Shown here one piece after another: positions 22,241-47,724 of a DNA stretch of 64,000 nt; the stretch's first letter is position 1; every line of letters begins with the position of its first letter. Position numbers and translations under genes: made by a program. The notes under the pieces are model-generated. The model worked only from the letters and a program-made list of their open reading frames with translations, searched no databases and was not told the DNA's origin. Source of the stretch: Blastocladiella emersonii ATCC 22665 (lineage: Eukaryota > Fungi > Blastocladiomycota); the NCBI GenBank assembly GCA_025594325.1, contig JANHCV010000015.1, positions 1 to 64,000 on the forward strand, written 5' to 3'.

Positions 22241-23543
22241 GACTCGTGGATACATTACTAGCTAGATCAGCCCGTCGGATGTTGCCTGTCTGTTGTTGCT
22301 GCGAAGCAACGATCATGCCCAGATGCAACGGCCTGTGCAACGGCCGGCACGCGCTATGCTCGCGGTACGTGGTGAACTGGCACGGCGGCTGCGGGGGCAA
22401 GAAAGGATTCTGACCGAGGACGACGTGAAACAGAGTCGTCTGATGAGTCGTTTGAACGATAAAATGGGCGGACATAGTTAACCTAATCAAGCTCTGAAGT
22501 TGGCGAGCAGACTTAAGGGCAGGGCTCGAGTCGAAGACAGGCCAAAGTAGCAACTCGATCCCGTCGAGGGGACGATAGAGTGTATCTCTCACTTGTATGC
22601 CAGAAGGCCACGTAAATGGGCTCAACCGACGACCGTTTCGGAGATGTAATGCGCTGTTGGCATACGTTTTGACCACTATCGGCGACGGACCAAGACCCTC
22701 AAATGAGTCGAGGCATACACACGATGATGGCTTCGAACGTGCCGGGTTTGCCATAAGGCTAGCAAGTCGTGTCGAGGTTGATGAGTGTAGGCGAGCCCTC
22801 GAGCGCTCCACGCGCTCCTCGGCACCCCGCAGGGGAGGTCGCCGAGGCCCCGGTCGCTGCAACACGCCGGATGGAGATCGAGCCCGCCAGGTGCGGTCTG
22901 CTCTTGTCGCTCGTGTGTAGGGGAGAGCCGCGTGGGGGAGTCATGCCCTCCCACAATATCGGGACGAGAAATGAGTAGGGAGCAAAGTCAGGGAGTGGGG
23001 CTGGGCGGTGTTTTAAGCTCGCTTCGAGGTGGGCTGGGGCCACGTGACTGGTTGCTAGGCGTCGATCGCCGCCCCCAGTGAAGCTTCCGCCGCGAGTTGG
23101 CACACTTAAGCGGTAGATTCATGGAGGAAACTCAAGTTGAACGGCTGGAGTCATAAGAGTCGGTACAGCGGTGGAGCTGGAGACGATCAGGTGCGAGGGG
23201 CCGCCGCCCCGCGTGAGGCGACGCGACCCGCTTCAGCCTTGGTGCAGCCGTCGAAACACTCCCGCGTGCACGAACGTTCTACGAATTGCTTTCGAAGCCC
23301 TATAAAGGCGAGTTACCCCTTAATTTACATCAACGGCCAGGAGTGCTTGCTTGAGGTCCACCCTGGGCCGCACCTGGCCGCTCTCACTGTCACGGCCGCG
23401 AGCGTCCAAACGTGCATACTTGCTTGTTGGATGTGGGACGGTTGCGTGTGGACAAAATCCAGAGCGGCCGTCCGCGACGCGTCGCGCCACACCTCGAGGA
23501 CCTGTCAGGGCAATCGGCCGAGCTGGGAACCTGAGAGCGGGTC

Positions 23544-23598
23544 TCACGCGCGGTCCGCTCTCGCTCCCGCGGCGCAACTCGATGCAACGAATGGAAAA
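23544..23598 (+). promoter_or_regulatory. Conserved upstream motif of the F-box-like family, copy 1
   Basis: cgctctcgctcc...ATGcaacgaATGgaaaa|ATG; matches the motif before copies 2-5. Confidence 0.65.
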
Positions 23599-26473
23599 AT
23601 GGATCAACCACTCAACTTTGCCTCGCTTCCCATCGAACTTGCCGCAACTGTCGCGGTCCTGTGCACGCCCTCGTCTCGGATCGCGAGCGCTGCACGCGTC
23701 CTCGCGGATGCTGTGCTCAATCAACGGTTGCTCCTTCTTTCTTGGTTCAATCGCTCCAGCCTGCCTCTCTCCGCTATTCTCGGAGAAGCCGCGCGCTCTG
23801 ATGGCTTCGATCTCTCTCCCGAAGCCTTGCAACGGCTGTCCCCCGTTGCGCGGTGCGCTATCCCAGCGATCGCACTTGGCGGCCGTTTCGATGGGCTTCC
23901 GCGCCCACCCCTTCACTTTAAGCTCTTTCACGCGCTCTTGAAGTCATCCCGCCGACTTCCAACCGCTCAACAACGCACGCTCCTGACTCGCGCCTGTGCT
24001 CGTTCTGGGCCCACGATCGATTGCGAGGCCGATGCCAAGGAAAGCTTCGTTATGGACACTATTGTTCTCACAATGTTCTTTGAAGCAACCGGAGACGTGG
24101 AAGCCTTTGACTGCGCGCTCGCAGCTTTGGCTCGCTCGTTTCCTACTATCATGACTGAGACCCGCGCGCCACTGCAGCAAATGCGCTTCGGTATAACGGA
24201 GCGTGCGTAGCAGAGCGAACGGGAGACGGCCGTGTGTCGACCCAGAAGCCGCCTCGTCCGCCGCGCGGCGCCACAGCGGTTGTCGGTGCCCCGCCGCACG
24301 CTGTGGCGCCGCGCCACTTCCCTCCTCGCCTTTACGTCATCCAGCGGCCCACGTGACGACCTGCGCCACCATCCTTCCCTCTTCTCCGCGGTCGCCCCTC
24401 GGCCGATGCTCGCTCCCTTGTGACCGCCACCGTCTACCACACGTTTGTCTTCGCTTCCCGCCCAACCCACTCCTGCTCTTCCTGTCACGTCTGGGCCGCT
24501 GGCGTCCCCTCCCCTAGCCGTGGGATCGCTGCTCCTCGTGGCCCTCCCTCGCCCCGCGCCGCGCGCTTGGCGAGGTCGACGCGGCCCGCGGTCGCACGCA
24601 CCCTGGGGACCGAGCCTCACCTCGGTACGGCGAGTCCGCCGTTCCTCGGCGGGCGCTACTCAGCTTTTCGCTGGTCCCCAACGCGCGCGTAGCGGATCTA
24701 CGCATCACCTCCTTCACCTTCACCTTCACCGCCTGCCCCCGCTCCTCGATCCTCTCGCCGGCCGGCACCTAATCTCCGTCACCATCTTTCCGCTCTCCCA
24801 CTCCTCTCCTTCGCCTTCGCTCGCATCACACCCTCGCCTCCTGCCCGCTTTCCTCCGCACACCCTCTCGTTCGCCTGCCATCGTCTGCTTTCATATATCG
24901 GATTCTGTTTCTCCCAAGCGGCTTCGCCAGGGCGATACTCAAGTGGATTCCCAATCACACCCACAGCTTCCTCTCTGATTTTGATCGCCTCTGGGACGGA
25001 CTGGAACATCCATCGTTCACGACCGCCGAGGTAACGAGCGCCAACGTGTTTTCTCGCTTCTCCATCGCTGCCGTGATGCACATGAACGGCGAAGCGCTCG
25101 AGATCATCTTGCGACACCATCCTCGCCCAGGTTCGGCTGTCGACTTCCTGGCGTCACCTAACGTGTACCCCGCGTTCTTTGGGCGCATCGACGACTATCC
25201 GGTCGGGGCCGCAATCAACACGCTTGACTGGCTAGTACGTCATGGCTGGGCACCGCAAGTCGCGTCAACGGGCCCCTTGCACATGATGGTACCTTGCGTC
25301 GCCATCAGCTCGTACCTTGACCCGCGACGCTTGGACTCCGCGACCCTCCTGCGCTTTTTCAAGACTTACGACCTGTCTCGCCTCAGTGGGGCACCCGACG
25401 CGATGCAGCGCGAACTCTTTTCCGACGGCTTGGCCCAGTGGGCTGCTGCGGGCCACGCTGGCGCTGTCATCGAGATTACGCACTTGTTGCCTTGGCTCAA
25501 CCAAATCCAATACTCGCCGCGTCTCGCGACCGGTATGGTTGAGGCCGAGTACCCCGAAACGGCGGATTTCATGAAGTCTCTTGATTGCATGCAGAGCGAA
25601 GACGTGCAACGGTTCTTTCAGCTTATGCTGCGCTCAGCAAACGAGTTGACCGGCGGATTGTACTCGGCGGCACCAGGGCTCTTCGCACGGATCATTCAAA
25701 TGGCGATCGGGCGGCTTGGTCAGTTGAAAACTATTGATCGCGTCTTTGCAGAACTCGACGTGATTGCTGACCGCGCTTTTGGGCACGATCTCGACTTGCT
25801 CGGGATTGGCGGTCTCGAAAACCGGATCAGGTTTGCAGCCGAGTTGAACTTTGATCCATCGAAAACGGATTGTCTCGAAGCACTCGCAACTACCCTGGTA
25901 CCAGTCCTTGCCGAGCCCAATGCCAAGGCTCTCATCGCGACAGTGATCCCCGAGGGGGCAGCTGGCCGCGAGTCGTGGTCAAGCATTTATGCGGGATTCT
26001 TCCTCGCCCTTTCAAACGAGTGCACGTGGGGGACTTGGCATTTTGCTATCGGTCAAAACTACACGCATCCGAGGTGTGTGCTGATGCACCACGATCAGCT
26101 GCTCCCCGCGTGGCGCGCGTTCCTTGCCATGTGCCCTCTCGAAGCCGTCAACATGAATTACGAGGACGACAACAACCTTGACGAGCAGCTCATGTTCGCG
26201 CCAACTTCCATTCATCGCTCCATGATGGGGAGTGGGATTCGAGTTCCACTGCCTCAAGACTGGGATACGGAGCGAGAGAAGGAGGGGTGTGGCGAGATGC
26301 TTCACGCAGCTGCGGCTCATGCGCCTGATCGGTTCGCCGAACACATGCTCGCTCAGTGCAACTACGACCCCGATTGTATCGAGAACCTCCCAAACGTCTT
26401 TCTCGACGGATCGCTCGATTGGTACATTGCCGGATCTTCCCTTGAAGGGCCCTTGGAGGAGGATTGGTCGTAG
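23599..26473 (+). pseudogene. F-box-like family copy 1, interrupted by a ~754 bp insertion (about 24184-24937)
   Basis: N-half MDQPLNFASLPIELAATV...LPRPPL...TMFFEAT...PLQQM. The C-half resumes in frame at LKWIPNH...HMNGEALEIILRHHPRPGS and runs to 26473. Together they reconstruct a full-length copy. Confidence 0.75.
24184..24937. other. Insertion of unknown origin within family copy 1
   Basis: Absent from the homologous position in the other copies. GC-rich left part and CT-rich right part; no TIR or exact TSD seen. Confidence 0.65.
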
Positions 26474-26824
26474 CGGCCTACACCAGCTGCGTCAGTTTGG
26501 TGCTGTATTGCCTGGGTGGACAATGGGCAGAATATTTTTATTACTAGGACCTCCACGAGAGAAGAGAGCCAGAACCCTCCTGGCGCACCGCGACACGCAG
26601 CGCTCCGCACTCATCCACTTCAACTCGTGATCGCGACCGCAAACCTGGTTGGAAGAGGTTCGGAGAGACAAGTCCTTGCTCTTGATTGAAACAATCCACG
26701 CATGAGGTGAGCGCAGCAGTTCTCGAAGCTAGTTATCCTGCCCTGAAAGCGCGTTGGTCATGCGAGCGTGACACCCACGTGAAACGCTTCGGCGTGGCGC
26801 AGGGGCTTGCGCAGCCGAAAACAA

Positions 26825-26887
26825 CGGCGGCGCACCGTGAAACGCTCTCTCTCTCGTACCGCGCCACCCCATGTATCAAATGAAAAA
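26825..26887 (+). promoter_or_regulatory. Conserved upstream motif of the family, copy 2
   Basis: cggcggcgcaccg...cgctctctctctc...ATGtatcaaATGaaaaa|ATG. Confidence 0.7.
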
Positions 26888-28939
26888 ATGAATCAACCGC
26901 TTACTCTACACTTGCTCCCCGATCAACTTGTTGCCCGCGTTCTTGCCTGTGCAACACCTGCGCTTCGGACCGTTTGCGCGTCTCAAGTTCTGGCCGACAT
27001 TGCATGCGGCGACGGTGTCCTTTCGCTGGTCTGGTTCAACCGTGTCGGCTTGCAGCTGTCGAAAATCTTGCTAGCGGCTGTGCCTTCTGATGGCTTTGCT
27101 CCCGATCGCGTTGCTGTCCACCACTCGGCGCTTACTCAGTGCGCGATCGCCGACATTTCCTTGCGCGCTTGCGGAATCGACGCCCTTCCTCGTCCCCCGC
27201 TACACTCCAATCTGCTTCAAGCGCTACTCAAGACCTGTCGGAAGCTCTCCGGGTTTTTGGAGTGGGCCGCGGTCTTGACCGCCGCTCCAGACACGACCAA
27301 CGAACCCTCTACTGGACTTCTGGTCGACGCAATCACACTTATCTTGTACCTCGAAGCAGCCCACGAAGCAAGCGAGCTCGACTCGGCGCTCTCCGCCCTG
27401 ATCCACCGGCTTCCTGAGCTAGCTCTCGAAGCACATGCCCCGCTTCACGACCTGGTCAACCTGATGCCTGACCACACCGGCGCCTCGCAGATCGGTCTCG
27501 AACCGCTCTGGCTCGCCTTCTACAACTCGCAGCAGCAGATTTCTGACATGGTTTCGACCGACCTTTTGTCGCTTGTTGCGATCTCGGCAGCGCTTCACAT
27601 GAACCGCGAGTCTCTCGAAGTCGTCATCAAGCACCACCCGCGCCCCGACTCGATTTTCAGGTTTCTTTCCTTGCCGAGCGTCCATGTCGGCTTCCTCCGG
27701 TGTGTCAACAACTACTCGCTCGATAATGTGTCTTGCTTCCTGAATTACCTGCTTGGCCATGGCTGGGCGCCGCATGAAGTCGCCGATGGAGATTCCTTCC
27801 TTTCGTCCGCGGTGATTTCCAGTCACGTCAAGCCGGAACCTTCCAACGCCGAGCTATTTCTCCACCTCTTCGAAAAGTACGACAACCCTCGGCTTGGCAG
27901 CTTAAGCAACGAGAGTCAGCGGACCCGCTTCTGTAACGCACTTGGCGGGTGGATGATCGCGGGCCAGCTCGACCCCGTTCTTGCGGTTGCAAGCGAGTGG
28001 CCATGGCTCGTTGATCCTGCGCACCAGTACTGGGACTCGCTTGTGATCCAGCTCCTTGGTGCCAATGCGCCCGATGTAGATGTTGGTCGGCTCCTTCTTG
28101 ACAAGCAGGGCGGTGAACTGCGCCGATTCCTGGAGCTCATGTTCAGCGAAGTTGGCGTTTATTACTCGGTGCGACCGGACCTCTACGCAAAGCTCATTTC
28201 ACTCGCGGTCGAGCGGTGCGGCAAGGCTTCCGCCGTTGAGCTCGTCGCAAGTTACACTTTCATCATCGTTAATGCCAAGCTTGGCCTCGACCTCGAACTT
28301 TTGGGGATCGGCGGCCTTGATGCCCGTGTCACGTTCGCGGGCCGTCTCATCAGACTGCAATCGGCCAGGGACGTTGATTTTAGCGACGAAATCCTTAATG
28401 CGATCGCGACCTGTCTCATTCCTGTCCTTCGTTCCGAAGATGCCGACGCTCGCATTGCATCGCTGATTCAGACTGGCCCTGGGAGCGGCACTCGATGGAC
28501 GATCGTATACGCTGCATTTCTTTCTGCCGCGGCGAACGAGTGCGCTGACCGGCCTTGGGTGCGAACCAAGCGTCTTTTCCTTGACACAAACGAGCTCGTC
28601 TCGGCGTGGCGCAGATTTCTTGCCATGTGTCCTCCCAAAGCCATCTACCCGACCCATGACTTGCTCGTCCTCCAGCAATTCAGGGACTTGCTTGGCGCAC
28701 TCAAACGTGTTCTGATTCCGCCACCCATGAGACGTGGGGCAGACATTTCAGCGGAGGCGAAGGCCCTTGCAACTCAAATGCTCCACGCGGCAGCAGCTCA
28801 CGCGCCAGACGGGCTGGCTAAGTTCTTGGCCAACAACATTTTTGGCGACGCACAGGAGCTGACGTGCCTGCGCGACATCTTTCCCAACGGTTTTCTCGAG
28901 AAACAGCTGGCGACGAAGCGCGGCAGATCCTTCAAGTAA
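26888..28939 (+). CDS. F-box-like family copy 2 (intact, intronless, about 683 aa)
   Basis: MNQPLTLHLLPDQLVARVL is F-box-like. Family motifs: WFN, LPRPPL, DAITLILYLEAA, HMN.ESL....HHPRPDS, GW.P, LGIGG, AWRRFLAMCP, LHAAAAHAP, FPNG. Confidence 0.85.
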   Translation: MNQPLTLHLLPDQLVARVLACATPALRTVCASQVLADIACGDGVLSLVWFNRVGLQLSKILLAAVPSDGFAPDRVAVHHSALTQCAIADISLRACGIDALPRPPLHSNLLQALLKTCRKLSGFLEWAAVLTAAPDTTNEPSTGLLVDAITLILYLEAAHEASELDSALSALIHRLPELALEAHAPLHDLVNLMPDHTGASQIGLEPLWLAFYNSQQQISDMVSTDLLSLVAISAALHMNRESLEVVIKHHPRPDSIFRFLSLPSVHVGFLRCVNNYSLDNVSCFLNYLLGHGWAPHEVADGDSFLSSAVISSHVKPEPSNAELFLHLFEKYDNPRLGSLSNESQRTRFCNALGGWMIAGQLDPVLAVASEWPWLVDPAHQYWDSLVIQLLGANAPDVDVGRLLLDKQGGELRRFLELMFSEVGVYYSVRPDLYAKLISLAVERCGKASAVELVASYTFIIVNAKLGLDLELLGIGGLDARVTFAGRLIRLQSARDVDFSDEILNAIATCLIPVLRSEDADARIASLIQTGPGSGTRWTIVYAAFLSAAANECADRPWVRTKRLFLDTNELVSAWRRFLAMCPPKAIYPTHDLLVLQQFRDLLGALKRVLIPPPMRRGADISAEAKALATQMLHAAAAHAPDGLAKFLANNIFGDAQELTCLRDIFPNGFLEKQLATKRGRSFK

Positions 28940-29127
28940 GCTCTCCTTTGCTCTCAGCCAAACTGGCGCCAAGCTGACACCGGCCCACTAGCTCCTTCAC
29001 AGTCCACAGAATACATGTTTTACATTCTAATGCATCAAGTTACAGGGTAGAGTTTGCAACACCCAAACGAGGTGGCGGTGCAAGAGGGTCGCAGAAGACA
29101 GCGAGGCGTCTGAAAACAGCTACCACG

Positions 29128-29185
29128 CGTCGCGGAGCGCTCTCTCTCCCGCAACGCGACACCACTGAATGAATCGAATGAAAAA
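29128..29185 (+). promoter_or_regulatory. Conserved upstream motif of the family, copy 3
   Basis: gcgctctctctccc...ATGaatcgaATGaaaaa|ATG. Confidence 0.7.
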
Positions 29186-31273
29186 ATGCATCCGCTTGAT
29201 CTGGACTCGCTGCCTCACGAAATACTCGAGCGTGTCTTAACACTGGCTCGTCCCTCGCTACGAGTCGTCAACGCCTCGCGCGTACTTGCACAAGCTTCAT
29301 TCAACTCCCGCATACTCGTGCTTGGTTGGTTCAACGACGTTGCCGACCATCTCGCGGATTTCCTTGTCAACAATGTGTTGAAGCGATTCAATGGTCACTA
29401 CTGTACTCACGGGACTGCCCTTGCCCGGTGCGCATGCGCCGCGATTACTTTAAAGAATTACTTTGGCAGTCTCCCGCGCCCGCCGCTCAACGCGAAGCTA
29501 TTTCGCGCCTATCTCCGGTCGTGCACTCCGATCTCTCCAAAGCGGCAGCGCGATATTCTTTCCTTCTACAACGAAGGCGGTGTTTTGCCGCTGAAATTCG
29601 AGGAATCAGCGTTTGTCATCATCGACGCGCTGAGTCTCATCGTGTACTTCGAAGCAACAGAGAACTTAACCGATCTCAAGCTCGCGCTTCATGATCTGGC
29701 TCACTCGCTGCCCGTGTTCACGCTTGAGAACCCAATTTCCCTGCACACGATGCTGGAATGGGTCCCAGATTGCACGCCGCGCGTAAGGAATGCCCTCAAT
29801 CAACTCCGGCGCAGCATTCCTATCCGTGCACCGAGCTCCATGCAGTTTGCGAGGCTCGATTTCCTAACCTTCCTTGCCCTCTTGGCCGCTACCCACATGA
29901 ACCTCGAGACGCTCAAGGCCCTTGTCGAGCACCACCCGCGACCTGATTCCGTTATCGAAGCCCTTATGGTGCCTAACGCGTACGGAACATTTCTACAATG
30001 CGTAAACAACCACCCACTTGAAATGGTCACGCGCTTGCTCGACTGGCTGATCGAGCGCGGTTGGGTCCCCAAAGACCCAATGTCGGAAAAGACGTACCCC
30101 TCATGCGTTGCCGTCAGTAGCTACCTTGAACCAGAGGTTACCGATCCCGATGCTTTCCTGCACCTTTTTCGAACTTACGATAGCGCTCGCCTCAATGGTG
30201 CACTAAGCGACGCGCAACGGATGTCCTTTTGTCGGGCTTTGGGGAAATGGATCGACAAGCGCCACTTTGACCCCGTTCTCGCGATTGCTCGCGAGTGTCC
30301 CTGGATCGCGGGACCCGAGCACTGGGGGTCTCTTGTCATGCAAGCCATCGAGTTGGACCCACCGGTCGCCGACCTTGGCTGCTTCTTCCTCGACAAGGAG
30401 GGCGATCAGTTGCAGCAGCTCTTCGCTGCGTTGCTTCACGAGATTCGAGTGCAATCAGGCGGGACTTACGCCGAAAACTCAGAGCAGTACTCTCGCATTA
30501 TTGCTCTTGCGGTTGAGCGTTGTGGCTCAGCTGCAGCCGCTGCGGCTGTCATGGAACACCTTGGTTCAATCGCTGACACCAAGTTTGGCCTTGAGTTCGA
30601 CTCGCTAGGGATCGGTGGCATGGAGGCCCGGCTCACATTTGCAGCCCGTCTCATTAAGCTGCTACGCGAGGCTGCTTCCAGCGACTCTCAATCCTTGCTC
30701 AACGCGCTTGCGACACTCTTGATTCCTGTCCTCGAAGCGCAAAACGCCGAAAGTCACTTCGCGACGCTCCTTCCTGTAAGCAACGCGAGCTGCTCACATT
30801 ACCCGACCGTTTACGCAGCGTTTCTTGTGACTGCTGCCGACGAGTGTTTGCTCCGGATCCGAACGTTATCCCAACGAGGCAGTTCGGAGCCGTCCTTCGA
30901 TGACAGGATGGTCCGCGCTTGGACAGCGTTTCTCGCCTTCTGCCCGCCCGAGGCTGTCAATCAGACAGATGAGCTCGTCCTCGGGTGGACGCGTGATGCG
31001 ATCCGCTCCATTCAGCGCGCTGCGATTAAAGGTCAGATCCGCGGTCTGAAATCTCATGTCAAAGCGCCCGGGTATGCAGCGGCGGCCAGCTTCATTCGCG
31101 CAGCGGCAGCCCACGCTCCGCTCCGGTTTGCGGAGCTTGTGATTGTGCAATGCGAGGAGGGCTTGCCGGCCCTCGTGGACATGAAGAAACTCTTCCCCAA
31201 ACGCTCCATCGACAGCTACCTGGATCAGCTCTACAACGACATGGAGGACGAGACCCTTGATATTGGCGAGTAG
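29186..31273 (+). CDS. F-box-like family copy 3 (intact, intronless, 695 aa)
   Basis: MHPLDLDSLPHEILERVLTL followed by the same ordered family motifs as copy 2. Confidence 0.87.
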   Translation: MHPLDLDSLPHEILERVLTLARPSLRVVNASRVLAQASFNSRILVLGWFNDVADHLADFLVNNVLKRFNGHYCTHGTALARCACAAITLKNYFGSLPRPPLNAKLFRAYLRSCTPISPKRQRDILSFYNEGGVLPLKFEESAFVIIDALSLIVYFEATENLTDLKLALHDLAHSLPVFTLENPISLHTMLEWVPDCTPRVRNALNQLRRSIPIRAPSSMQFARLDFLTFLALLAATHMNLETLKALVEHHPRPDSVIEALMVPNAYGTFLQCVNNHPLEMVTRLLDWLIERGWVPKDPMSEKTYPSCVAVSSYLEPEVTDPDAFLHLFRTYDSARLNGALSDAQRMSFCRALGKWIDKRHFDPVLAIARECPWIAGPEHWGSLVMQAIELDPPVADLGCFFLDKEGDQLQQLFAALLHEIRVQSGGTYAENSEQYSRIIALAVERCGSAAAAAAVMEHLGSIADTKFGLEFDSLGIGGMEARLTFAARLIKLLREAASSDSQSLLNALATLLIPVLEAQNAESHFATLLPVSNASCSHYPTVYAAFLVTAADECLLRIRTLSQRGSSEPSFDDRMVRAWTAFLAFCPPEAVNQTDELVLGWTRDAIRSIQRAAIKGQIRGLKSHVKAPGYAAAASFIRAAAAHAPLRFAELVIVQCEEGLPALVDMKKLFPKRSIDSYLDQLYNDMEDETLDIGE

Positions 31274-31576
31274 CCGACGCGGTTCGCGAATCTAGTTGCC
31301 GGGTTTTTTTTCTCCGAATAAATCTTATGTAAAAAATGCCGTGATGAGGACGCAAATTGGTCGGCGACCCTTTTGTTCCGTCCTGGTCCACCTCGTCGTG
31401 CATCATCGCGATGAACTATAAAACTAGCCTCACTATACCTCAAGGCTTTCAATGCGCGTTGCATGGGCGCGCGGAGGCAGGGGTGAGGAGGTCGCGCGAG
31501 TCGCGTTGCGCCACAGTCTGACCGAGCTGCCACGGGCATCACCCCAGCGTCACCGGCTGAGTCGCGGTCAAGGCAC

Positions 31577-31639
31577 GGCGGCGCACCGCAAACCGCTCTC
31601 GCTCTCCCACACCCGCGATCCGATGTATCACATGAAAAT
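31577..31639 (+). promoter_or_regulatory. Conserved upstream motif of the family, copy 4
   Basis: cggcggcgcaccgcaaaccgctctcgctctccc...ATGtatcacATGaaaat|ATG. Confidence 0.7.
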
Positions 31640-33611
31640 ATGACCCTTGCTTCTCTACCCGACGATATACTTGCGCTTCGTCACCGCACTCTGCGTGCCC
31701 TCGTCTCGGACCGCACGCGCTTCGCGAATCCTGGCGAACGCTACAGTCGACCGCCCGGCCATCCTGCTCGCTTGTTCAACTGCGCTGGGGGTACCCTCGC
31801 CAGCCAAATTCGCAGGGCTATACCCGAGCGTCGCCAGTCGTATGATTACATCCCCGAGTTCGGATCGGTCGTTGCCCGATGCGCGAGTGCATCGCTTGCG
31901 CTGCAGGAACATGGTGTCGAATACCACATCTCCTCCCACTCAACACCAAACTTTTTGACGCACTCATGCGGCCTTATCGGTGCATCTCTGCTGCGCGCTA
32001 GCGCGCGCTCTCGGACCGCATCGCAGCTTCAGTGGGCGAGTGGAAGGATACCGCGGTGGGTCACGTCATCGACGCTGTTACCCTTGCTCTGTACTTCGAA
32101 GCAACCGAGAACCTGTCCGAACTCAACCACGCGCTGGCAGCGCTGATCTGCGCACTTCCTGTGCTTGCCATCGAGGCGAGCATTCCGCTACAGACGATGC
32201 TGGGGAGGATTCCGGAACATGAGTCCCGGTAAGCTGAGGCGTGCGCTTGACCAGCATACCACGATCGCAGGCAAACCGCTTCTCGCCGATGTGCTCACGC
32301 TTGTCGCAATTTCGGCGGCCTTCACATGAAAGTCGGGGTACTCGAGACCGTCTTCAAACATCACCAGCGTCCTGACTCAATCATTTCAACCCTAGAGGTC
32401 CCTTGCGTTTATTACACCTTCCTTGCGTCCATCGATCTGTGCAATTTCGACGAATCCCGCGACGTCCTCGACTGGCTTTTCAGCAGCGGTTGGACACCGC
32501 AAGTTGCCTTGGTCGCCGTTGAGGTTGACGGGCACGTCCCTTGTGCCGCGATGTGCGCCTACTTCAAGCCGGATTTCTTAACCGACGACGAACTGCTCGA
32601 CATGTTCGAGAATTACGACCGTGCTCGCCTCGCTGGGCTGGCCGACGAGAATCAACGCGAGATGATTCGCGACATGCTCCTGCGCTGGATCGGCACGGGA
32701 CGCTTCACGTCTGTCCTCACGATTCTCCAACCGTGGCCGTGGCTAGTCGAGCCGCGTACTTGATCCTGTTCACGACCCAAATGATCAAGTCGGGATGTCC
32801 CAAGTCGGTTTTGGACGAACTTGTTCTTTTCGCTCCGGATCGCTACGCGTTACAGGTTCTGCTTGGTTTCGCGCTGCAATCGGTACCGAACCTCTACAAA
32901 CCCGCTTTGTGAGTCTATTCGCGCCTTCTTTCGCACGCCATGGATCGGTGCGGCTGGGATGCGACGCTCGAACTTGTTCTGGAGCACCTCCATCACTTCG
33001 CAGATCACACCTTTGCCTTGGACCGAGACTCGCTTGGGTTTGGTGCGACCAATGTTCGCCTTGTCATCGCGAGTCGGCTTGTCGAGTGCTTGTGTGGCGA
33101 AGGAGGCGCTTACAGAGAAGCCCCCCTCAGCGCGCTCGGAACAATCCTGATTCCTGTTGTGATGGAGCCGAACGGCGTCGAGTTGCTTGCCCAGCTGATC
33201 CACGCAGACGACGAAATCCTTTTTCAATGGTTGTTCTTGTACGCGGCCTTCATCACGGCCGTCCGAGACTCTGAATTCCACTTCTCCACGCGTGGTCCCC
33301 GTGGCCACGCTGCCCCCGCATGGTACAAGTTCTTAGCCGTGTGTGCCCGCCCGAAGTCGCCAATGTCGAGGACCCAGAGTTTGTCAAGGTGGTGTCAAAA
33401 CCACTCGGCACCATTTCAACTATGTTCTCATGAACACGGAGCCCGAAAGCAGTTACCTGGCGCTTGCCAAACAGTTGCTTCGCGCAGCGATCAACCATTC
33501 TCCTGCTGGCTTCGTTGCGCTCCTCAATCACCTGTGCAAGGGCGACGCACGCACCTTATTTTGCACTGTCTGTTTCCTGATGGCTCCATGGACTGGACCC
33601 TGTACGACTGA
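31640..33611 (+). pseudogene. F-box-like family copy 4, multiply frameshifted
   Basis: Family motifs are spread over different frames: MTLASLPDDIL; VPSSRTARASRILA; DAVTLALYFEAT; FKHHQRPDS; LLRAAINHSP; LFPDGSMDW. Internal stops near 32230 and 32761. Confidence 0.85.
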
Positions 33612-40986: not shown

Positions 40987-41687
40987 GGTGTTGATCTCGT
41001 TGCAAGAGAGGTCCTCGATGACGCAGAGGAGAGGAAGTGGAGTCAAGGCGCAGCAGGAGTCGGTACCGAGGCAGCGGGCGGGGCATGCGCCACACAGACC
41101 AGCGATCGGCCAAAGTTTGCGTGTGGCTGTGGCGCGGGCGTGACGCCGTTGCCATGCGTTTTCTACGCGCGCTCCTCTTCGCGCTCCTCGTCAACTCACA
41201 CGATACGATGGCAAGGGAGCGAATGAAGCTTGTAGTTGATGCAACGTAGCTCAGTCTATCCATCCATCTGCTTGCTCTCGAGACGAACCGAGCTCCAAAC
41301 AACTCCCCTCGCAGGCGAGATGTCACGAATGCCTGCTCGCAGTGAGCCTAGTTGGTGATCCGCCTCGTGCTGCATGATGAACCACATGGCAGCGAACTGA
41401 GAGAGGGGAGGGAAGGCCTTAACGACTCGCATCTGTGGCAATGGCGGCCGCGAGCTCATGGATCCCTCGCCATGGGTGCCCTCGCAGCGACAACACCTCG
41501 CTGCCTGCGAACCGCAAGGTTACCGGTTACGTGCGGCTGCAAGCTCGTGCTGCCCACCTTGCGCGAGTGGGATTCTCGGAGCGAGAAGTCGACAGGGTCG
41601 GCGAGCTCGCCGGTAGGCTGACGACACGGCCGCACTCCTGCCCCGCCTGCTGCGCCACCAACCACTCTTGCGCAACACCGTTCTAAC

Positions 41688-41933
41688 ATGCGGCAAACGC
41701 TTCGCGTGCTCTTCGTCACTGGCATGGCTGTCGGCGGCGGGCTCGTCGGCTTCTACCTCCAGGACCGCGCCAAGCAGCGTATGCTCGTACGCTCCGCCTC
41801 CATCGCTCGCCCTGGACCTGAACGCCGACTCACCCACACGCTCGCACATTGGTAGGAAAAGTACGCGGCCAGCTTCACGGACGAGGAGCTCAAGCAGACG
41901 GTCCGCGACATTCGCGGCTCGCGCGAGGCCTGA
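41688..41933 (+). CDS. Small single-TM protein (58 aa; intron 41787-41855), left-arm copy
   Basis: MRQTLRVLFVTGMAVGGGLVGFYLQDRAKQRML-EKYAASFTDEELKQTVRDIRGSREA*, with a canonical GTACGC..TAG intron and host-like codons. Confidence 0.65.
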
Positions 41934-42600
41934 CCCTGAATATAGTACGCCTGCCTTGAGACGCCTCCTCGGCCCGCGACCGCAGCGACTACGACCATGA
42001 GCGGCGCGCGTCCCGACCTGCTTGCATCTGTGCGGGCCATCGTCGCAGAGACAACGTGCTCCGTTCGCGAACGGGGCGCGCGTCATCGCGTCAGGGATCC
42101 ATGACGCCGCGTCGGCACGACCACCCGCATTCTCGGCACCTCCCTGGCCGTGCACAAGCGAACCATAGCGGCGACACGGGCGGCGCCTCGCGACCGCGTG
42201 CGCGCGTCAGTGCGGGGTGAGCGGTCCAGGGACGGCGAGTCATGAATCCGGCGGTGGCTGGGTGCCTTGTCGCGCTCCTCGGCCGCGCGTGTCAGAGTCA
42301 GCGCCGCCGCCGTTCACAGCTCGGCCATGGTTTTCGCACTTCGGCCCGCGTCGTACACCTGTCCGCGTGTTGAGCGTGTGCGAGCGCGGGGAGAGGGGCA
42401 CTAGGCGAGCGACGGAGCCCTCAAAAGCGGGCGGGTCCCCGCGCTCACCCTCACTCGATCACAGCACCCATCACCTCCCACCCTCCCTACGGCGCTAGAC
42501 GTTGCCTGTACACCTGTCGGCCGGCTCGACAGCTCTACACCCGCATCACCTCCGACTAGACGTCTGGACCACCATCTCCCCCAAAACTACAACCACCAAC

Positions 42601-44223
42601 ATGTCGCGTCGCTCAACCCGCTCGACCAAGCCGCGCCGCTGGACCGTGGCGTCGCTCGTGACGCTGCTCGCGCTCGTGCTGCTGGGCACGCAGGCCGTCA
42701 CCGCGGCTCCCGCCAGCTCGGGCTCGTGGATCGTCGAGCTCAAGACCGACAAGGACCTCAAGGCCGCGCAGCAGGCCGTCGTCGAGTTCTACCAGAAGCA
42801 GGGGCTCGCCAACGCCGCCGACAAGGCCAAGCTGATCCAGGTCGGCACGGGCTACCGCGCGCTCGCCATGCCCGCGGGCGCGCCCGAGCTGCAGGCCAAG
42901 CTCGCGTCGCTGTCGACCGTGAAAAAGGTCGAGAAGGAGATCGAGTGGAAGATCTTCGAGACGCAGCGCAACCCGCCGGCGGGCCTCGACCGCATCGACG
43001 CCAAGAACGGGCTCGACGGCGCCTTCACGTTCCCCGCCAACGCGGGCGAGGGCGTCAACGTCTACGTGATCGACACGGGCATCAACACGCAGCACCCGGA
43101 CTTCCAGGGCCGCGCCAAGTTCCTGCAGGACTTTACGGGCGAGGGCGCCAACGACCTGCAGGGCCACGGGTCGCACTGCGCGGGCACCATCGGCGGCGGC
43201 ACGTTCGGCGTCGCCAAGAAGGCCAACCTGATCGCGCTCAAGGTGTTTGACCGCTCGGGCCGCGGGTCCAACGTGGCCATCCTGCAGGCGCTCGAGGCGG
43301 TCGCGCGCGACGTGCAGCAGTCGCGCAAGCCGTCGGTCGTGTCCATGTCGCTCGGCGGGCCGCGCGCGCCGGGGCAGGACGACACGACGACGCAGCGCGC
43401 GATCCAGTCGCTGGTCCAGCTCGGCGTCAACGTGATCGTGGCAGCGGGCAACGAGTCGCAGGACGCGTGCGGCGTGTCGCCGGCCTTCATCCCGGACGCC
43501 ATCACCGTGGCGGCGTCGGACCCGCGCAACGACGTGATCGCCGATTTCTCGAACGTCGGCCGGTGCGTCGACATCATCGCCCCCGGCGTCAACATCCAGT
43601 CGGTCGACGCGGCCAGCGGCGGGTCCAAGGTGCTGTCGGGCACGTCCATGGCGACGCCGCACGTGGCCGGCGTCGTGGCCGCGCTCCGGTCGCAGGGCAT
43701 GAGCGCGCAGCAGGCGCAGCAGGAGCTGCTCGGTAAGGCCACGCCCAACGTCGTCAAGGGCAACCTGCGCGGCACGCCCAACAAGTTCCTGTTCATCGAC
43801 CCCGCGCTCGGCGGCGGCAACAACGGCGGCGGCGGCGGTAACGGTGGTCGCCAGCCGCCCACGCAGCCTCCGACCCAGCCTCCGACCCAGCCGCCCACGC
43901 AGCCGCCCCAGCAGCCCCAGCTCCCGCCCGGCTTCCCGCCCGGTTTCCCGTTCCCCGGCCAGCCCGGCTTCCCCGGTGACGATCTCGGCGGCAGCGACGG
44001 CGACGACGGCCAGGGCCAGTTCCCGCCCGGCTTCCCCGGCTTCCCCGGTGGTGACGACGGTCAAGGCCAGTTCCCGCCCGGCTTCCCCGGCTTCCCCGGC
44101 GGCGGCGACGACGGCCAGTTCCCGCCTGGGTTCGGTGGCGACGATGGCCAGGGCTTCCCCGGCTTTGGCGATGACGGCCAGGGCTTCCCCGGCTTTGGCG
44201 GCGGCTTCCCCTTCAAGCAGTAA
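42601..44223 (+). CDS. Secreted subtilisin (S8A, proteinase K-like) with I9 prodomain and a Gly/Pro/Phe/Asp repeat tail, left-arm copy
   Basis: Signal peptide, then catalytic motifs VYVIDTG (Asp), HGSHCAG (His), AAGN (oxyanion) and GTSMATPHVAG (Ser). Probable ATG at 42601. Confidence 0.96.
   Translation: MSRRSTRSTKPRRWTVASLVTLLALVLLGTQAVTAAPASSGSWIVELKTDKDLKAAQQAVVEFYQKQGLANAADKAKLIQVGTGYRALAMPAGAPELQAKLASLSTVKKVEKEIEWKIFETQRNPPAGLDRIDAKNGLDGAFTFPANAGEGVNVYVIDTGINTQHPDFQGRAKFLQDFTGEGANDLQGHGSHCAGTIGGGTFGVAKKANLIALKVFDRSGRGSNVAILQALEAVARDVQQSRKPSVVSMSLGGPRAPGQDDTTTQRAIQSLVQLGVNVIVAAGNESQDACGVSPAFIPDAITVAASDPRNDVIADFSNVGRCVDIIAPGVNIQSVDAASGGSKVLSGTSMATPHVAGVVAALRSQGMSAQQAQQELLGKATPNVVKGNLRGTPNKFLFIDPALGGGNNGGGGGNGGRQPPTQPPTQPPTQPPTQPPQQPQLPPGFPPGFPFPGQPGFPGDDLGGSDGDDGQGQFPPGFPGFPGGDDGQGQFPPGFPGFPGGGDDGQFPPGFGGDDGQGFPGFGDDGQGFPGFGGGFPFKQ
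43855..44215 (+). repeat. Coding repeats in the subtilisin tail: (PPTQ)4 and PPGFPGFPGGDDGQGQF-type units
   Basis: Visible at both DNA and protein level; mirrored at 49240-49600. Confidence 0.9.
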
Positions 44224-45319
44224 GTAGGCGGCGGCGGCACCGAGGGTCGTTCGCGCTCGCGCCGGTCGCGACGGCGAGCTCTCCGGTCCACCTTTATCCA
44301 CGGTTATGGCATGTTTGCATCTAGTCTATGAATGAATCCATGTTGCTCTCCATCTGTTCCTTGTGTTGTCGAGAGAGAGCGAGAGTCAGGAGAGCGAGCC
44401 GAGTCGCTGGCCGAGTCGGTCAGTCGGTCGCTGCGCCACACCTTGAGCACGCTCGCCGACCGTCCTCTCTCCCCCGCATCGCCGACCTCGCACATGTACT
44501 GTAAGCCATGGATCAAATGCATCGATACTTGCGGCAACTAAGTCGAACCGCAAACACTTGCTGATTTTGGACCACCGGCAAGCGACGTCGCGTCGCTTCG
44601 TGTGCGTGAGGCCGCTGCTTCGCGTGCGGGAGAGCTCCTGCGGCTTCCACGCGGCCCGACCGTCAGTGCTTTGAGAGGTCCTCTCCATGTTCTCTTTGGG
44701 TGCTCAGTGTCGAGTTCAACTGTGCCCCGCAGTGGGCGCGCGCCGGGATGCGGCAGGGAAGCGTTCGCTCGCGAAGGCACACGGCTCAGCTCTGCTGCTA
44801 GACCTTCCCCTGCTGCAGCTCAGCCTGCCTTTCAAACCATTATCTTGCTGAGATTATCGTCAAGGGGTCGCTGTGACTTGCGCCGCGGCGACGCCGTTGA
44901 GAACGGATGCGGCCCGGTCCGTTCGCGGTCCGTTCGTGGCCCTCTCGCCTGCCCAATGCGGCCTGCTTCGCGCACGCATAGGTGTTTATCAAATCACTCA
45001 GCTCACATGGCTTGGCATCATCGAGAGCGACGTTGGTCTCGGTTCAGGTCTTGGCCGCGTTCCTCCGCTGTCGCCCTCGTGGAGGACGACGGCCTTATTC
45101 GGTCTTGTCCTTGATCGCCGGCCCGACCGCTTTGACACGTCACGCGCGTTTGAGTATCGCGAGGGAGGCGCGTCCACATCAATCGGATCCTGCCAGACAG
45201 CCTCAGTTGCAAGCTGCTCAAGGGCATCAAGTCCGCGTCAGTCAGGCTTCGTCGCGCTAAACCTCATCTCCTCTCGTGCTCCGTGGCAATGAAAACGCAA
45301 ATATGTTACAAAACGTTCG

Positions 45320-47313
45320 TCAGTTGCTCGCAGGCTTCTCCAGGACACCTTCGGGGAACACACGGGGAATAGCGCTTGCGTCACCTTGAACGTTGAGCAG
45401 AAGCGCGGCGAAACGGTCGGGGGCATGGTCCGCCGCAGCGCGAAGCAAATCCTCCATCACCACGGCCTCGAGTTTGGCTTGGCGTCTTGTCAAAGCCGCA
45501 TTACCAAGCACAGCGCGACAAAGAATCCCAAGGGGATCGGTGAGTTGCCCCATCAAGTCTTCATCGTCCTTGTTAACGATCGCGGGCGGGCACATGGAAA
45601 GAAAGCTGCGCCAAGCTGGGATTAGGTTCTTGTTGTGGAATAGCTTCTTGCTCCCGGAGGGCACTTCACCTCCCGCCCAGCAGCTTTCATATGACACAGC
45701 GACAAAGTAAGCTTCGTATATGGTTGTCCAGTCAAGGTGACTTGCGTCGTCAGAGATCAGGCGCACGAGTTTGGCGCTGCTGTCAGGATCCGTCAGGACT
45801 GGGATCAGAGTCGTTGCGAGCGCGCTGAACCACTCGTTGTAATATTCAACCTCATCTTCGAAAAGCAGCGCAAGGCGTTCCGCAATACGGATGCGAACGT
45901 CCGTTCCGCCAAGTTTGAGGGACTCGAGTTGAAGACCAAAGGCACAATCGGCGAATAGCCCAAGTTGCTGGACAATGAGGTCGACTGTTGTCGCGTGCCC
46001 GCACCGCTTCATGATGAGCGAAACGACGCTTGAAATTGTTTTCGATCCCACGAGCGCGCCAAACATGCGGCCAAGGAGCCCGTGCGGCTCGTCGTCGCCC
46101 TGTTCGCCAATGAGGAGTCGATTGACCACGGTTAAGCGAGCTGTTTTCAAGACTTGGGTCGCGACCGTGGCCAAGTACTCGAAGTCAGCAATCCAGGGCC
46201 AAGCTTGAGCAATCGCAAGCATAGGCTCGACGGAGCCTTTGCCAATCCAGCCAAGTAGCGGCATGCGGATCGCAATTTGCTGGAATTCGCTGGCCAAATC
46301 GACCAGGCGGTCACGATCGTACATTTCGAACACGTGAAGCAAATCGTCCAAGTCATGGACTGTTGGGCGGAGGTAAGCACTGAGAGCGACACATGGGGTT
46401 AGCCTCCGACGGTGCGACGTTCCGATGCGTCGCGTCCACCCGCGGTCCATGAGCCAGTCGAGCATGCGATATGCGCGCTCGAGTCCATAGGTGTCGATAC
46501 GCGCGAAAAAGGTCCAATAAACCCAAGGCATCTCGAGCACGGAAATGATGGTGTTAGGACGCGGGTGGTGCTCGAAAACGTACTTGAGAGTCTCGACATT
46601 CATGTGCGTAGCAGCAGATATCGCAATAAGGGTGAAAAAGTCCGCGCGAAGCACTTCGCCGGTGTTACCTTCCTGTTCTCGAAGCTGGTGCCGAAGCTCC
46701 CCGAGTTGTTCATGCGCGTCACTTGAAAAATCTGGGATCCACACGAGGAGCCGCTCCAGGGCTCCAAATGCCTCGAACGCGAGCAGCGGAAACGAGTGAG
46801 CGAGAACTTGGAGCGCATGGTCGAGGCTGCGAAAATCTTTGGTTGCCTCAAAATAGAGAGCAAGGGTCATAGCGTCCACGGCGCGGACTGCGGTGATAGC
46901 GGTACGACCATGATGAGGCGGAGCGACGATCGCGTCCAGAAGTGCACGCTGCTCCACAACAGTGTAGCGTCGAAAGGGCCGCATCAGTGCGTCAAAAAAG
47001 AGATGCCAAGCGGAGGACGCGGAAGATCACCGAAATTACCTTTGAACAAGAGTGAGGCGATCGTGCATTGGGCAATGGCAGAGCTGCGCCGGGGGGCGCG
47101 AATGTCTATGTAGCTGTTTGCGGGTGCAGCGTCGCGAAGCAGACATGCAAGCTGGTCGCCAACGCGATTGAACCACGTGAGCAAGAGCGACGGGCGGTCA
47201 ACGGCAGCGGCAGCAAAGGTTCGAGACGCGCTGACGACCCGAGACGAGGGCGCGCTGAGAGTAGCGACGAGCGCCACCGTGTCTTCCGGGAGAAGCGCAA
47301 AGTTGAAATCCAT
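45320..47313 (-). pseudogene. F-box-like family copy 5, full length with a single apparent frameshift near 46995
   Basis: MDFNFALLPEDTVALV...LPRPPL (46984-47313) continues in another frame as LFDALMRPF...DAMTLALYFEAT...HHPRPNT...LLRAAADHAPDRFA...FPEG. One base is missing in a T6 run relative to copy 4. Confidence 0.8.
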
Positions 47314-47392
47314 CGTCAGTTCATTCGATGCATTAAGTCGCTGTCGCGGTTGCTGGGAGACAGAACACGGTCAGCGGCGCGGCCGCCGTTTT
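47314..47392 (-). promoter_or_regulatory. Conserved upstream motif of the family, copy 5
   Basis: Minus strand reads aaaacggcggccgcgccgc...tctgtctccc...ATGcatcgaATGaactgacg|ATG. Confidence 0.65.
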
Positions 47393-47724
47393 CACCCCTG
47401 GGGCGAAGGCTCGACCCGTGGGAACTCGGCTCTGACAGATTTGACAGCTGCGAGGGTGCGTGGCGCAACGCGCTTCCGCATCACACGCACCATGGACGGA
47501 GCAGAGCGTTCAAAGACCAGATGCTGCCAAACGCTGGAAATAATAATATGTTGATCTGGAGGTAGACACGTACCAAACAGATATTTTCAAGTAAGCACAG
47601 GCGTGTGTGCTCCTCAGCAACTCAGCGGAGGCTTGTTCCCGCCTGATCACTCCCGCGGGCCGCGAGTGCGTTCAGCACGAGATAAACGATCATATATACT
47701 CGACAATCGCGAGAAAACTAGCAG

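What the first reader, a model, noticed from the sequence alone, without database searches (positions are those of the whole stretch)
23599..33611. Tandem array of a family I cannot name: F-box-like N-terminus plus a ~620-aa conserved body
Seen: four head-to-tail copies starting at 23599, 26888, 29186 and 31640 (unit about 2.3-2.5 kb once the insertion is removed), plus two more at 45320-48808. The proteins are strongly diverged but keep an ordered motif series: LP..(L/I)...V; WFN; LPRPPL; DA.TL.LYFEAT; HMN.E.L....HHPRP; GW.P; YD..RL; FGL.L..LGIGG; LAT.LIPVL; AWR.FLA.CP; LRAAA.HAP; FP.G. Established: F-box motifs recruit Skp1-Cullin1 ligases, and rapidly turning-over F-box arrays occur in host-pathogen conflict settings and in large DNA viruses. 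Inference: this is the best candidate here for an undescribed system, a diversifying set of SCF substrate adaptors (immunity, effector or selfish-element role). The function is not demonstrable from sequence.
Basis: partly seen in the sequence, partly recalled or inferred. Interest (0 to 1): 0.8.

Follow-up and report, generated by a model that had tools for sequence, protein, structure and literature searches.

The report
Orphan tandem gene family in Blastocladiella
The repeated genes are real: they belong to an unannotated family of soluble all-helical proteins that I found only in the water mould-like fungus Blastocladiella emersonii, but no test here supported the proposed F-box (ubiquitin-ligase adaptor) identity, so the function remains inferred.

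Summary
The window is the first 64 kb of Blastocladiella emersonii ATCC 22665 contig JANHCV010000015.1. It holds six paralogous copies. Two are intact (c2 683 aa, c3 695 aa), one is interrupted by 751 nt (c1), one has a single frame break (c5), one lacks its 5' third to half (c6), and one is degraded (c4).

A profile search of 1.84 billion representative proteins found relatives only in this one genome. There they also sit in tandem pairs and arrays. Pfam, PDB sequence profiles, and Foldseek against PDB and viral structures give no family. The AlphaFold model is an all-helical solenoid.

The F-box reading rests on an LPxE(L/I) first helix only. Pfam F-box models, a PDB profile search, hhalign against the Skp2 F-box (probability 2%) and Foldseek all failed to support it.

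New findings:
- The window copies belong to a derived clade with GC3 of 0.60-0.68, against 0.85-0.98 for host genes. None of the six is in the public gene set.
- This clade shares a conserved 5' leader.
- Pairwise dN/dS is 0.27-0.49 with dS saturated.
- The family loci carry near-perfect inverted duplications and insertions of a Polinton/Maverick-like element.

Verdict: a real, undescribed, lineage-restricted family. An SCF role is not shown. Interest is moderate to low.

The parts
23599..24183 (+). Copy c1, N-terminal part (195 open codons; LP helix, WFN, LPRPPL, FFEAT motifs)
   Evidence: tblastn; translation; alignment
24184..24934 (.). 751-nt GC-rich (0.68) insert that splits c1. It is unique in all sequence held. 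Whether it is an intron or an insertion is undecided.
   Evidence: Frame-compatible GT..AG pairs exist (donor 24207; acceptors 24919 or 24931), but the donor GTAGCA is poor.
24935..26473 (+). Copy c1, C-terminal part (512 open codons)
26888..28939 (+). Copy c2, intact ORF of 683 aa
29186..31273 (+). Copy c3, intact ORF of 695 aa. The AlphaFold model is all-helical with pLDDT 75.5.
31640..33611 (+). Copy c4, a pseudogene with at least three frame changes and three in-frame stops
45320..47313 (-). Copy c5. It has one frame change at the T6 run 46994-46999 and is otherwise open (109 + 554 codons).
47821..48850 (-). Copy c6. It lacks codons 1 to about 330 and has one frame change and one stop. Its 5' leader is retained directly upstream.
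23477..23598 (+). Conserved 5' leader of c1 (ACGCGTCGCGCCAC block, CT run, and an ATG-rich block next to the start)
26760..26887 (+). Conserved 5' leader of c2, including ATGTATCAAATGAA at 26871-26884
29060..29185 (+). Conserved 5' leader of c3, including ATGAATCGAATGAA at 29169-29182
31501..31639 (+). Conserved 5' leader of c4 (TCGCGTTGCGCCAC at 31501-31514; ATGTATCACATGAA at 31623-31636)
47314..47473 (-). Conserved 5' leader of c5 (GCGCGTTGCGCCAC at 47460-47473; ATGCATCGAATGAA at 47320-47333)
48851..49045 (-). Leader of the 5'-deleted c6 (ATGGATCAAATGCA at 48934-48947). It lies inside the inverted-repeat arm, so it is duplicated at 44508-44521 on the plus strand.
41630..44650 (+). Left arm of a perfect 3021-nt inverted repeat. 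It carries a subtilase gene (42601-44223) and a copy of the c6 leader.
48805..51825 (-). Right arm of the inverted repeat. The two arms bracket c5 and c6.

Best explanation
The array is part of an undescribed multigene family that I could find only in Blastocladiella emersonii. It encodes soluble, Leu/Ala-rich, all-helical (alpha-solenoid-like) proteins of about 680-860 aa. The family grows and decays by tandem duplication, block duplication of whole arrays, inverted duplication, internal deletion and pseudogenisation. The six window copies belong to a derived clade with three features: no host-type codon bias, a shared conserved promoter/5' leader, and absence from the public gene set. Intact copies are kept open by purifying selection. 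The proposed mechanism is inferred, not shown. The proteins would act as scaffolds or adaptors. The N-terminal ~110 residues (LP helix, WFN helix, LPRPPL), among the better-conserved stretches, would be a possible constant docking end. The faster-evolving solenoid would be the binding end. The clade would be co-regulated through its shared leader. Whether the docking partner is Skp1 is open.
For: Shown by tool results. (1) Six copies are homologous and share ordered motifs. (2) The window equals positions 1-64000 of JANHCV010000015.1, from exact-protein look-ups; the species comes. (3) An exhaustive profile search gave only six true hits, all from this genome. IMG/VR and JGI metagenome contigs gave nothing. 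(4) Other loci of the same genome carry tandem pairs and arrays. (5) In the tree, the low-GC3 copies form one clade with 100/99 support. Window copies pair with copies of the 262-309 kb array: c3 with L002a, c4 and c5 with L002b, and c2 with c6. (6) The AlphaFold model has 40 helices, no strands and pLDDT 75.5. Foldseek returns only generic solenoids at TM 0.1-0.25. (7) There is no transmembrane segment. (8) ORFs of 683-709 codons stay open at 57% GC, and dN/dS is 0.27-0.49. (9) The 5' blocks have mean pairwise identity 0.48-0.65, against 0.32 in the distal flank and 0.35 at fourfold sites. The motif ATGNATCRAATGAA occurs 6 times in the window against 0.03 expected, always at copy 5' ends. (10) GC3 is 0.60-0.68 in the window copies against 0.85-0.98 in host genes.
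Against: There is no direct evidence of transcription or protein. None of the six window copies is called in the public annotation, though that annotation came from gene predictors run through funannotate. Four of the six window copies are damaged. The scaffold/adaptor role rests only on the fold class and the conservation pattern, and conservation is spread along the protein rather than sharply modular. Absence from other Blastocladiomycota is judged from predicted proteomes, which would miss low-GC3 genes just as this one did.
Confidence: 0.55

Rival explanations
1. The proteins are true but highly divergent F-box proteins. The N-terminal LP helix region would bind Skp1, and the helical body would recruit substrates to an SCF ubiquitin ligase. 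The family would then be a lineage-specific expansion of substrate adaptors.
For: L9 and P10 are invariant in all 16 members. The pattern LPxE(L/I)xxx(V/I)xxLxxP, followed by a basic/hydrophobic helix (ASRVLA) and L.WF, resembles the first helices of an F-box. The position at the extreme N-terminus ahead of a large non-catalytic domain is typical of F-box proteins. Many genuine F-boxes escape Pfam. Lineage-specific F-box expansions are common (background knowledge).
Against: No Pfam F-box family matches any of 12 N-termini at E<=10. The N-terminal profile finds no PDB F-box protein at E<=10. hhalign against the Skp2 F-box aligns only 20 columns at probability 2%. The spacing from LP to the helix-3 position is 1-2 residues short, and the conserved Trp of helix 3 is replaced by Val or Leu (from the sequence). 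AlphaFold predicts helices of 10, 16 and 27 residues at low confidence rather than the compact three-helix F-box, and Foldseek finds no F-box.
Confidence: 0.17
2. The low-GC3 copies are foreign or selfish DNA: remnants of an integrated virus, or cargo or companions of the Polinton/Maverick-like element found beside family genes. Their odd composition would reflect that origin.
For: GC3 of 0.60-0.68 is far from the host value. The copies are unannotated and restricted to one genome. An element of at least about 14-15 kb, with an A32-like packaging ATPase (E 1.5e-11), a weak rve integrase and terminal inverted repeats, lies inside the contig-15 family array. It also abuts P0002 on contig 10.
Against: The family genes lie outside the element's terminal repeats. 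The element's own genes have GC3 of 0.70-0.86, closer to the host than the family is. There is no homologue in IMG/VR contigs or BFVD structures. Older paralogues (P0004, P0005, P0006, P0038) have host-like GC3 near 0.9 and sit among ordinary host genes. The low-GC3 clade nests within them on a midpoint-rooted tree. The window arrays are flanked directly by host genes with no element. Two element copies chosen blind have no family gene in the flank examined.
Confidence: 0.1
3. The window arrays are a decaying repeat graveyard. The copies no longer function, and the intact ORFs are simply the most recent survivors.
For: Four of six window copies are damaged. There is no codon bias. None of the six is called in the annotation. 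dN/dS of 0.3-0.5 is high for working genes.
Against: c2, c3, L002a, L002b and L008a are open over 683-709 codons, even though branch lengths are 0.4-1.2 changes per site. At 57% GC a random frame would carry about 25 stops over that length (my estimate). dN stays well below dS. The 5' leader is conserved above the neutral level.
Confidence: 0.13

Closest known systems
F-box proteins (SCF substrate adaptors; Pfam F-box PF00646 and F-box-like PF12937)
   Same: Both have an N-terminal LPxE(L/I) helix followed by hydrophobic heptad-like spacing and a proline about 13 residues on. Both have a large non-catalytic C-terminal domain. Both expand in lineage-specific tandem arrays.
   Different: There is no profile match by Pfam, by a PDB profile or by hhalign. 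The helix-3 Trp is missing and the spacing is shorter. The predicted helices do not form a compact 40-residue three-helix unit. Skp1 binding was not tested.
Alpha-solenoid scaffolds (ARM/HEAT/TPR-type proteins such as importin-beta, SYS-1/beta-catenin, condensin CAP-G, CBP80)
   Same: Both are all-helical, elongated and soluble, with no catalytic signature. These proteins are the only kind of structure Foldseek returns.
   Different: TM-scores are only 0.1-0.25 and identity is 10-14%. No repeat family is detected by Pfam. The resemblance is in fold class only.
Lineage-specific tandem multigene families that evolve by birth and death (for example expanded F-box, ankyrin or MGF families in fungi and large DNA viruses)
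   Same: All show head-to-tail arrays, deep divergence between neighbours, a mix of intact and broken copies, and block and inverted duplications.
   Different: There is no sequence or structural relationship to any of them. ASFV MGF 505 appears only at E 0.027 and TM 0.24-0.34. The family has a shared conserved 5' leader and a clade-wide lack of host codon bias.
Polinton/Maverick elements (this applies to the neighbouring element, not to the family)
   Same: The element beside family genes has an A32-like ATPase, an rve-type integrase signal, terminal inverted repeats, a length of at least about 14-15 kb and at least 17 copies.
   Different: No protein-primed polymerase, capsid or protease domain was recognised by Pfam or PDB sequence search. 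The family genes lie outside its termini.

Membership tests
F-box proteins | Significant match to an F-box sequence profile (Pfam PF00646, PF12937 and relatives) | tested here: not met
   hmmscan of full-length copies at E<=1 and of 12 N-termini at E<=10 gave no F-box family. The N-terminal profile against PDB at E<=10 gave no hit.
F-box proteins | Profile-level similarity to a solved F-box (Skp2) | tested here: not met
   hhalign of A3 against the Skp2 F-box (sequence verified against 1FQV/1FS1) aligned 20 columns with probability 2%. The template was a single sequence, so power was low.
F-box proteins | Compact three-helix fold of about 40-50 residues at the N-terminus | tested here: inconclusive
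   AlphaFold predicts helices 11-20, 23-38 and 42-68. pLDDT is about 50-56 in the full model and 63 in the N-terminal model. Foldseek gave no F-box hit, but the model is too weak to judge.
F-box proteins | Conserved LP motif and hydrophobic pattern of helix 1 | tested here: met
   L9 and P10 are invariant in 16 members, and the LPxE(L/I)xxx(V/I) pattern is present.
F-box proteins | Binding to Skp1 | not testable with these tools
   No complex prediction or experiment was available.
ARM/HEAT/TPR-type alpha-solenoid repeat families | Match to a repeat profile, or a structural superposition with TM above about 0.5 | tested here: not met
   No Pfam repeat family was found. The best Foldseek TM-scores are 0.1-0.25.
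Giant-virus (NCLDV) multigene families | Sequence or structural homologue in viral collections | tested here: not met
   The IMG/VR pattern scan with tblastn found none. The best BFVD Foldseek hit has E 2.4e-3 and TM 0.17 and is a generic repeat protein.
Cargo of the neighbouring Polinton/Maverick-like element | Gene located between the element's terminal inverted repeats | tested here: not met
   The terminal repeats end at L002 6250 and L008 17022, and the family copies start or end 137-211 nt outside them. In L001 the repeat abuts a truncated family copy. The window holds no element sequence.

The most novel reading that the evidence does not exclude
The family marks a host-element conflict zone. 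Its members would be adaptors (possibly SCF-linked) aimed at, or exploited by, the Polinton/Maverick-like virus element. That element has at least 17 copies in this genome and sits within about 350 nt of family genes at two of roughly six family loci, once exactly at the breakpoint of a 3.6-kb inverted duplication of a family gene. The clade's shared leader would then be a common induction switch.
Probability: 0.07. Interest if true: 0.7.

Novelty: new member of a known kind. Interest (0 to 1): 0.35.

Why it matters
This is a concrete case of a sizeable gene family that is almost invisible in a published fungal genome, probably because its codon composition differs from the genes that gene predictors learn from. 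At least 18 copies or fragments were seen, and at least five low-GC3 ORFs are intact. For Blastocladiella, a model organism for phototaxis and zoospore biology, it adds unannotated genes and a shared regulatory leader that can be tested directly. More generally, proteome-based claims of orphan status or of gene absence in early-diverging fungi can be distorted by composition-biased annotation. If the N-terminus proved to bind Skp1, the family would be a very divergent F-box class; the present evidence does not support that.

Tried and rejected
- The search for homologous proteins returned nothing in three runs: c3 alone, the family alignment, and c2 residues 1-135. It did not return even the B. 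emersonii relatives that the listing of cluster members shows to be in the collection. I therefore treat these blanks as uninformative.
- The first exhaustive profile kept only 352 positions, covering the C-terminal body. The N-terminal module was never searched exhaustively.
With the narrower one it found nothing in viral or metagenome contigs.
- RIP or methylation-driven decay as the cause of low GC is rejected. CpG observed/expected is 1.19, TpA/ApT is 0.47 and (CpA+TpG)/(ApC+GpT) is 1.2.
- Subtelomeric location is not shown. The window is a contig end but carries no AAACCT-type repeat.
- An enzyme reading is rejected. The His residues of HMN/HHPRP are not conserved in P0004-P0006, and the invariant columns are mostly L, P, A and G.
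- A membrane or secreted protein is rejected.
- Target-site preference of the mobile element for family genes is not confirmed. Two element copies chosen blind have no family gene in the flank examined.
- The c1 insert as an intron: only poor donor sites fit the frame, so this is left open.
- Site-level tests of positive selection were not attempted because dS is saturated.
- A literature search for Blastocladiella plus F-box, Polinton or Maverick found nothing relevant.


Full report
**What is there.**
The window has 65-73% GC except for two islands of 56-61% GC, at about 22-34 kb and 44.6-48.8 kb. A tblastn search with the two long ORFs of the first island finds six homologous units, with E-values of 1e-15 to 1e-124 and 25-47% amino-acid identity.
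- c1: 23599-24183 plus 24935-26431
- c2: 26888-28936
- c3: 29186-31270
- c4: from 31640, with the recognisable part at 31936-33383
- c5: 47319-45335 on the minus strand
- c6: 48850-47821 on the minus strand

**State of the copies.**
- c2 (683 aa) and c3 (695 aa) are intact.
- c1 is split by 751 nt of GC-rich sequence (24184-24934) that is unique in all sequence I hold. Both halves are open, at 195 and 512 codons. Frame-compatible GT..AG pairs exist, but the donor is poor, so intron versus insertion is undecided.
- c4 changes frame at least three times and has three in-frame stops.
- In c5 the two frames meet at a T6 run at 46994-46999.
- c6 lacks codons 1 to about 330, yet its 5' leader sits directly upstream, so the loss is an internal deletion.

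**Whose genome.**
The flanking genes are eukaryotic and fungal in style: cytosolic LeuRS, an Hsp90 ending in MEEVD, a 7tm_3 receptor, a subtilase and a mitochondrial carrier. Exact-protein look-ups of the subtilase (42601-44220) and of a thioredoxin-like gene place the window at positions 1-64000 of contig JANHCV010000015.1 of assembly GCA_025594325.1. That assembly is Blastocladiella emersonii ATCC 22665. The window is a contig end but shows no telomere-type repeat.

**How far the family reaches.**
- Pfam finds nothing in any member.
- PDB sequence profiles find nothing.
- An exhaustive HMMER profile search of 1.84 billion representative proteins gave seven hits. One is a spurious repeat protein. 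The other six all come from this same genome.
- IMG/VR and JGI metagenome contigs hold no relative.

The three word-index searches were blank even for proteins known to be in that collection, so I do not count them.

Two caveats apply. The exhaustive profile covered only the C-terminal body (352 positions). And absence elsewhere is judged from predicted proteomes.

**Family layout in the genome.**
- On the same contig at 262-309 kb there is a second array: L008a (annotated as P0003), L008b, a fragment, L008c, then L002a, a fragment, and L002b (annotated in truncated form as P0001).
- Contigs 1 and 4 carry tandem pairs.
- Contig 10 carries P0038 and its partial copy P0002.

Several of these copies are unannotated or mis-modelled. 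None of the six window copies is in the public gene set: no gene is called between the two subtilase copies, and c2 and c3 are absent from the protein collections. The annotation came from gene predictors run through funannotate, and the methods mention no transcript evidence.

**Composition.**
| Sequence class | GC3 or GC |
|---|---|
| Host genes in the window | GC3 0.85-0.98 |
| Window family copies | GC3 0.60-0.68 |
| Family spacers | GC 0.53-0.60 |
| Host intergenic DNA | GC 0.63-0.68 |
| Long-form paralogues on other contigs | GC3 about 0.86-0.92 |

There is no CpG depletion and no RIP-like dinucleotide signature.

**Phylogeny.**
In a maximum-likelihood tree the low-GC3 copies form one clade with 100/99 support. 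That clade nests beside P0002/P0038, then L008a, then the long forms (the root is only a midpoint).

Window copies pair with copies of the other array, which indicates that whole arrays were duplicated as blocks:
- c3 with L002a (98/96)
- c4 and c5 with L002b (98/99)
- c2 with c6 (99/98)

**Selection.**
Pairwise NG86 dN/dS is 0.27-0.49, with dS of 1.4-2.1, which is saturated. This shows relaxed but real purifying selection across the gene. It does not show diversifying selection, and site tests are not feasible at this divergence. ORFs of 683-709 codons stay open on branches of 0.4-1.2 changes per site at 57% GC, which argues for function in the intact copies.

**A shared 5' leader.**
The 5' flanks of nine low-GC3 copies align. 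They share these blocks:
- ACGCGTTGCGCCAC, about 120 nt upstream
- GCTGTCAA
- AAAAC..CGGCGGCGC
- a CT run
- ATGNATCRAATGAA, abutting the start codon

Mean pairwise identity in these blocks is 0.48-0.65. It is 0.32 in the distal flank and 0.35 at fourfold sites of identical codons.

The last motif occurs six times in the window against 0.03 expected, always at the 5' end of a copy. This count includes the c6 leader and its duplicate in the other arm of the inverted repeat. In the other loci it occurs only at low-GC3 copies. Its frame relative to the ORF differs between copies: it is in frame in L002a and L002b, and at +1 in c2 and c3. It is therefore conserved as a nucleotide element. I infer a common promoter/leader and co-regulation. 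This is not shown.

**Protein features.**
- The AlphaFold model of c3 has 40 helices, no strands, pLDDT 75.5 and pTM 0.64. The core (residues about 230-530) is at 85-92, and the first 40 residues are at about 50-56.
- Foldseek against PDB and BFVD returns only generic helical-repeat proteins at TM 0.1-0.25.
- There is no transmembrane segment, and the proteins are acidic and rich in Leu and Ala.
- Invariant columns are mostly L, P, A and G, plus D147, R482, C586 and H643. The His residues of HMN/HHPRP are not conserved in the long forms. This does not look like an enzyme.

**The F-box question.**
L9 and P10 are invariant, and the first helix follows LPxE(L/I)xxx(V/I). Beyond that, nothing supports an F-box:
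- No F-box Pfam model matches any of 12 N-termini at E<=10.
- The N-terminal profile finds no PDB hit at E<=10.
- hhalign against the verified Skp2 F-box aligns 20 columns at probability 2%.
- The N-terminal model has pLDDT 63 and gives no F-box match.

The helix-3 Trp is absent and the spacing is 1-2 residues short, as the sequence shows. Many true F-boxes are hard to detect, so I leave the idea at about 17% rather than excluding it.

**Rearrangements around the family.**
- A perfect 3021-nt inverted repeat (41630-44650 and 48805-51825), carrying a subtilase gene and the c6 leader, brackets c5 and c6.
- On contig 10 a 3608-nt block containing a family gene is duplicated in inverted orientation at 99.9% identity. 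The copy, P0002, begins at nt 70 of the coding sequence, directly against the terminal repeat of a mobile element. Its annotated first codons are read from that repeat.
- That element is at least about 14-15 kb long. It has terminal inverted repeats of at least about 650-800 nt ending in a palindrome, an A32-like ATPase and a weak rve integrase signal. The ATPase cluster shows at least 17 copies in the genome.
- A second copy of the element is inserted in a spacer of the contig-15 array.
- The family genes lie outside the element's termini.
- Two element copies chosen blind have no family gene in the flank I could see.

The adjacency is therefore noted but not explained.

**Verdict.**
The array is real. 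It belongs to an undescribed family that I could find only in B. emersonii, made of soluble helical proteins that evolve by birth and death. The SCF/F-box interpretation and the claim of diversification are not supported by the tests available. A viral origin is not supported either. The most useful new facts are the clade-wide lack of host codon bias, which plausibly explains why the genes are unannotated, and the conserved shared leader. Both can be tested directly with existing expression data.

Noticed in passing
window 41630-44650 and 48805-51825: A perfect (100%) 3021-nt inverted repeat. It duplicates a subtilase gene (both copies are annotated) plus the 5' leader of c6, and it brackets c5 and c6 with 4154 nt between the arms. 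It is either a very recent inverted duplication, ongoing gene conversion or an assembly artefact.
   Followed up: partly
L001 1-10027; L008 17022-21880 continuing to L002 1-6250; L010; L011: A Polinton/Maverick-like element of at least about 14-15 kb. It has an A32-like packaging ATPase (Pfam E 1.5e-11), a weak rve integrase signal and terminal inverted repeats of at least about 650-800 nt ending in a perfect palindrome. Copies are 96-98% identical, and the genome holds at least 17 (15 distinct ATPase sequences). No polymerase, capsid or protease domain was recognised.
   Followed up: partly
L001 10001-10027 and L009 10001-13677: The annotated protein P0002 (KAI9168350) starts inside the element's terminal repeat. 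It is a 99.9% inverted partial copy of P0038 (KAI9168343) from nt 70 of the coding sequence onward, within a 3608-nt duplicated block. It has lost the LP helix.
   Followed up: yes
window 23599-33611 and 45320-48850; L002 6387-8513; L008 12307-16820: The public annotation misses every low-GC3 family copy in the window and several elsewhere. It also mis-models P0001 (N-terminally truncated) and P0003 (a spurious intron; the ORF is open for 703 codons). Gene predictors trained on GC3-rich genes are the probable cause.
   Followed up: partly
window 26871-26890 and 29169-29190; L002 6387 and 9413: The conserved ATGNATCRAATGAA block puts two upstream ATGs just before the main start. In c2 they open a 6-codon upstream ORF whose TGA stop overlaps the main ATG. 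In L002a and L002b they are in frame and would extend the protein. This may be a translational control element.
   Followed up: partly
L009 14000-19000: A 5-kb island of 56-60% GC with no called gene. It lies next to P0038 and holds neither family nor element homology. Its content is unknown.
   Followed up: no
window 10544-10987: A 138-nt direct repeat (80% identical, 306 nt apart) at the 3' end of the thioredoxin/glutaredoxin-like gene on the minus strand (the first copy spans its stop).
   Followed up: no
P0005/P0039 on contig JANHCV010000004.1: A long-form member (P0005) has a paralogue at 90% identity or more (P0039, 827 aa) about 15 genes away. Recent dispersed duplication therefore also affects the host-like subfamily.
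   Followed up: no
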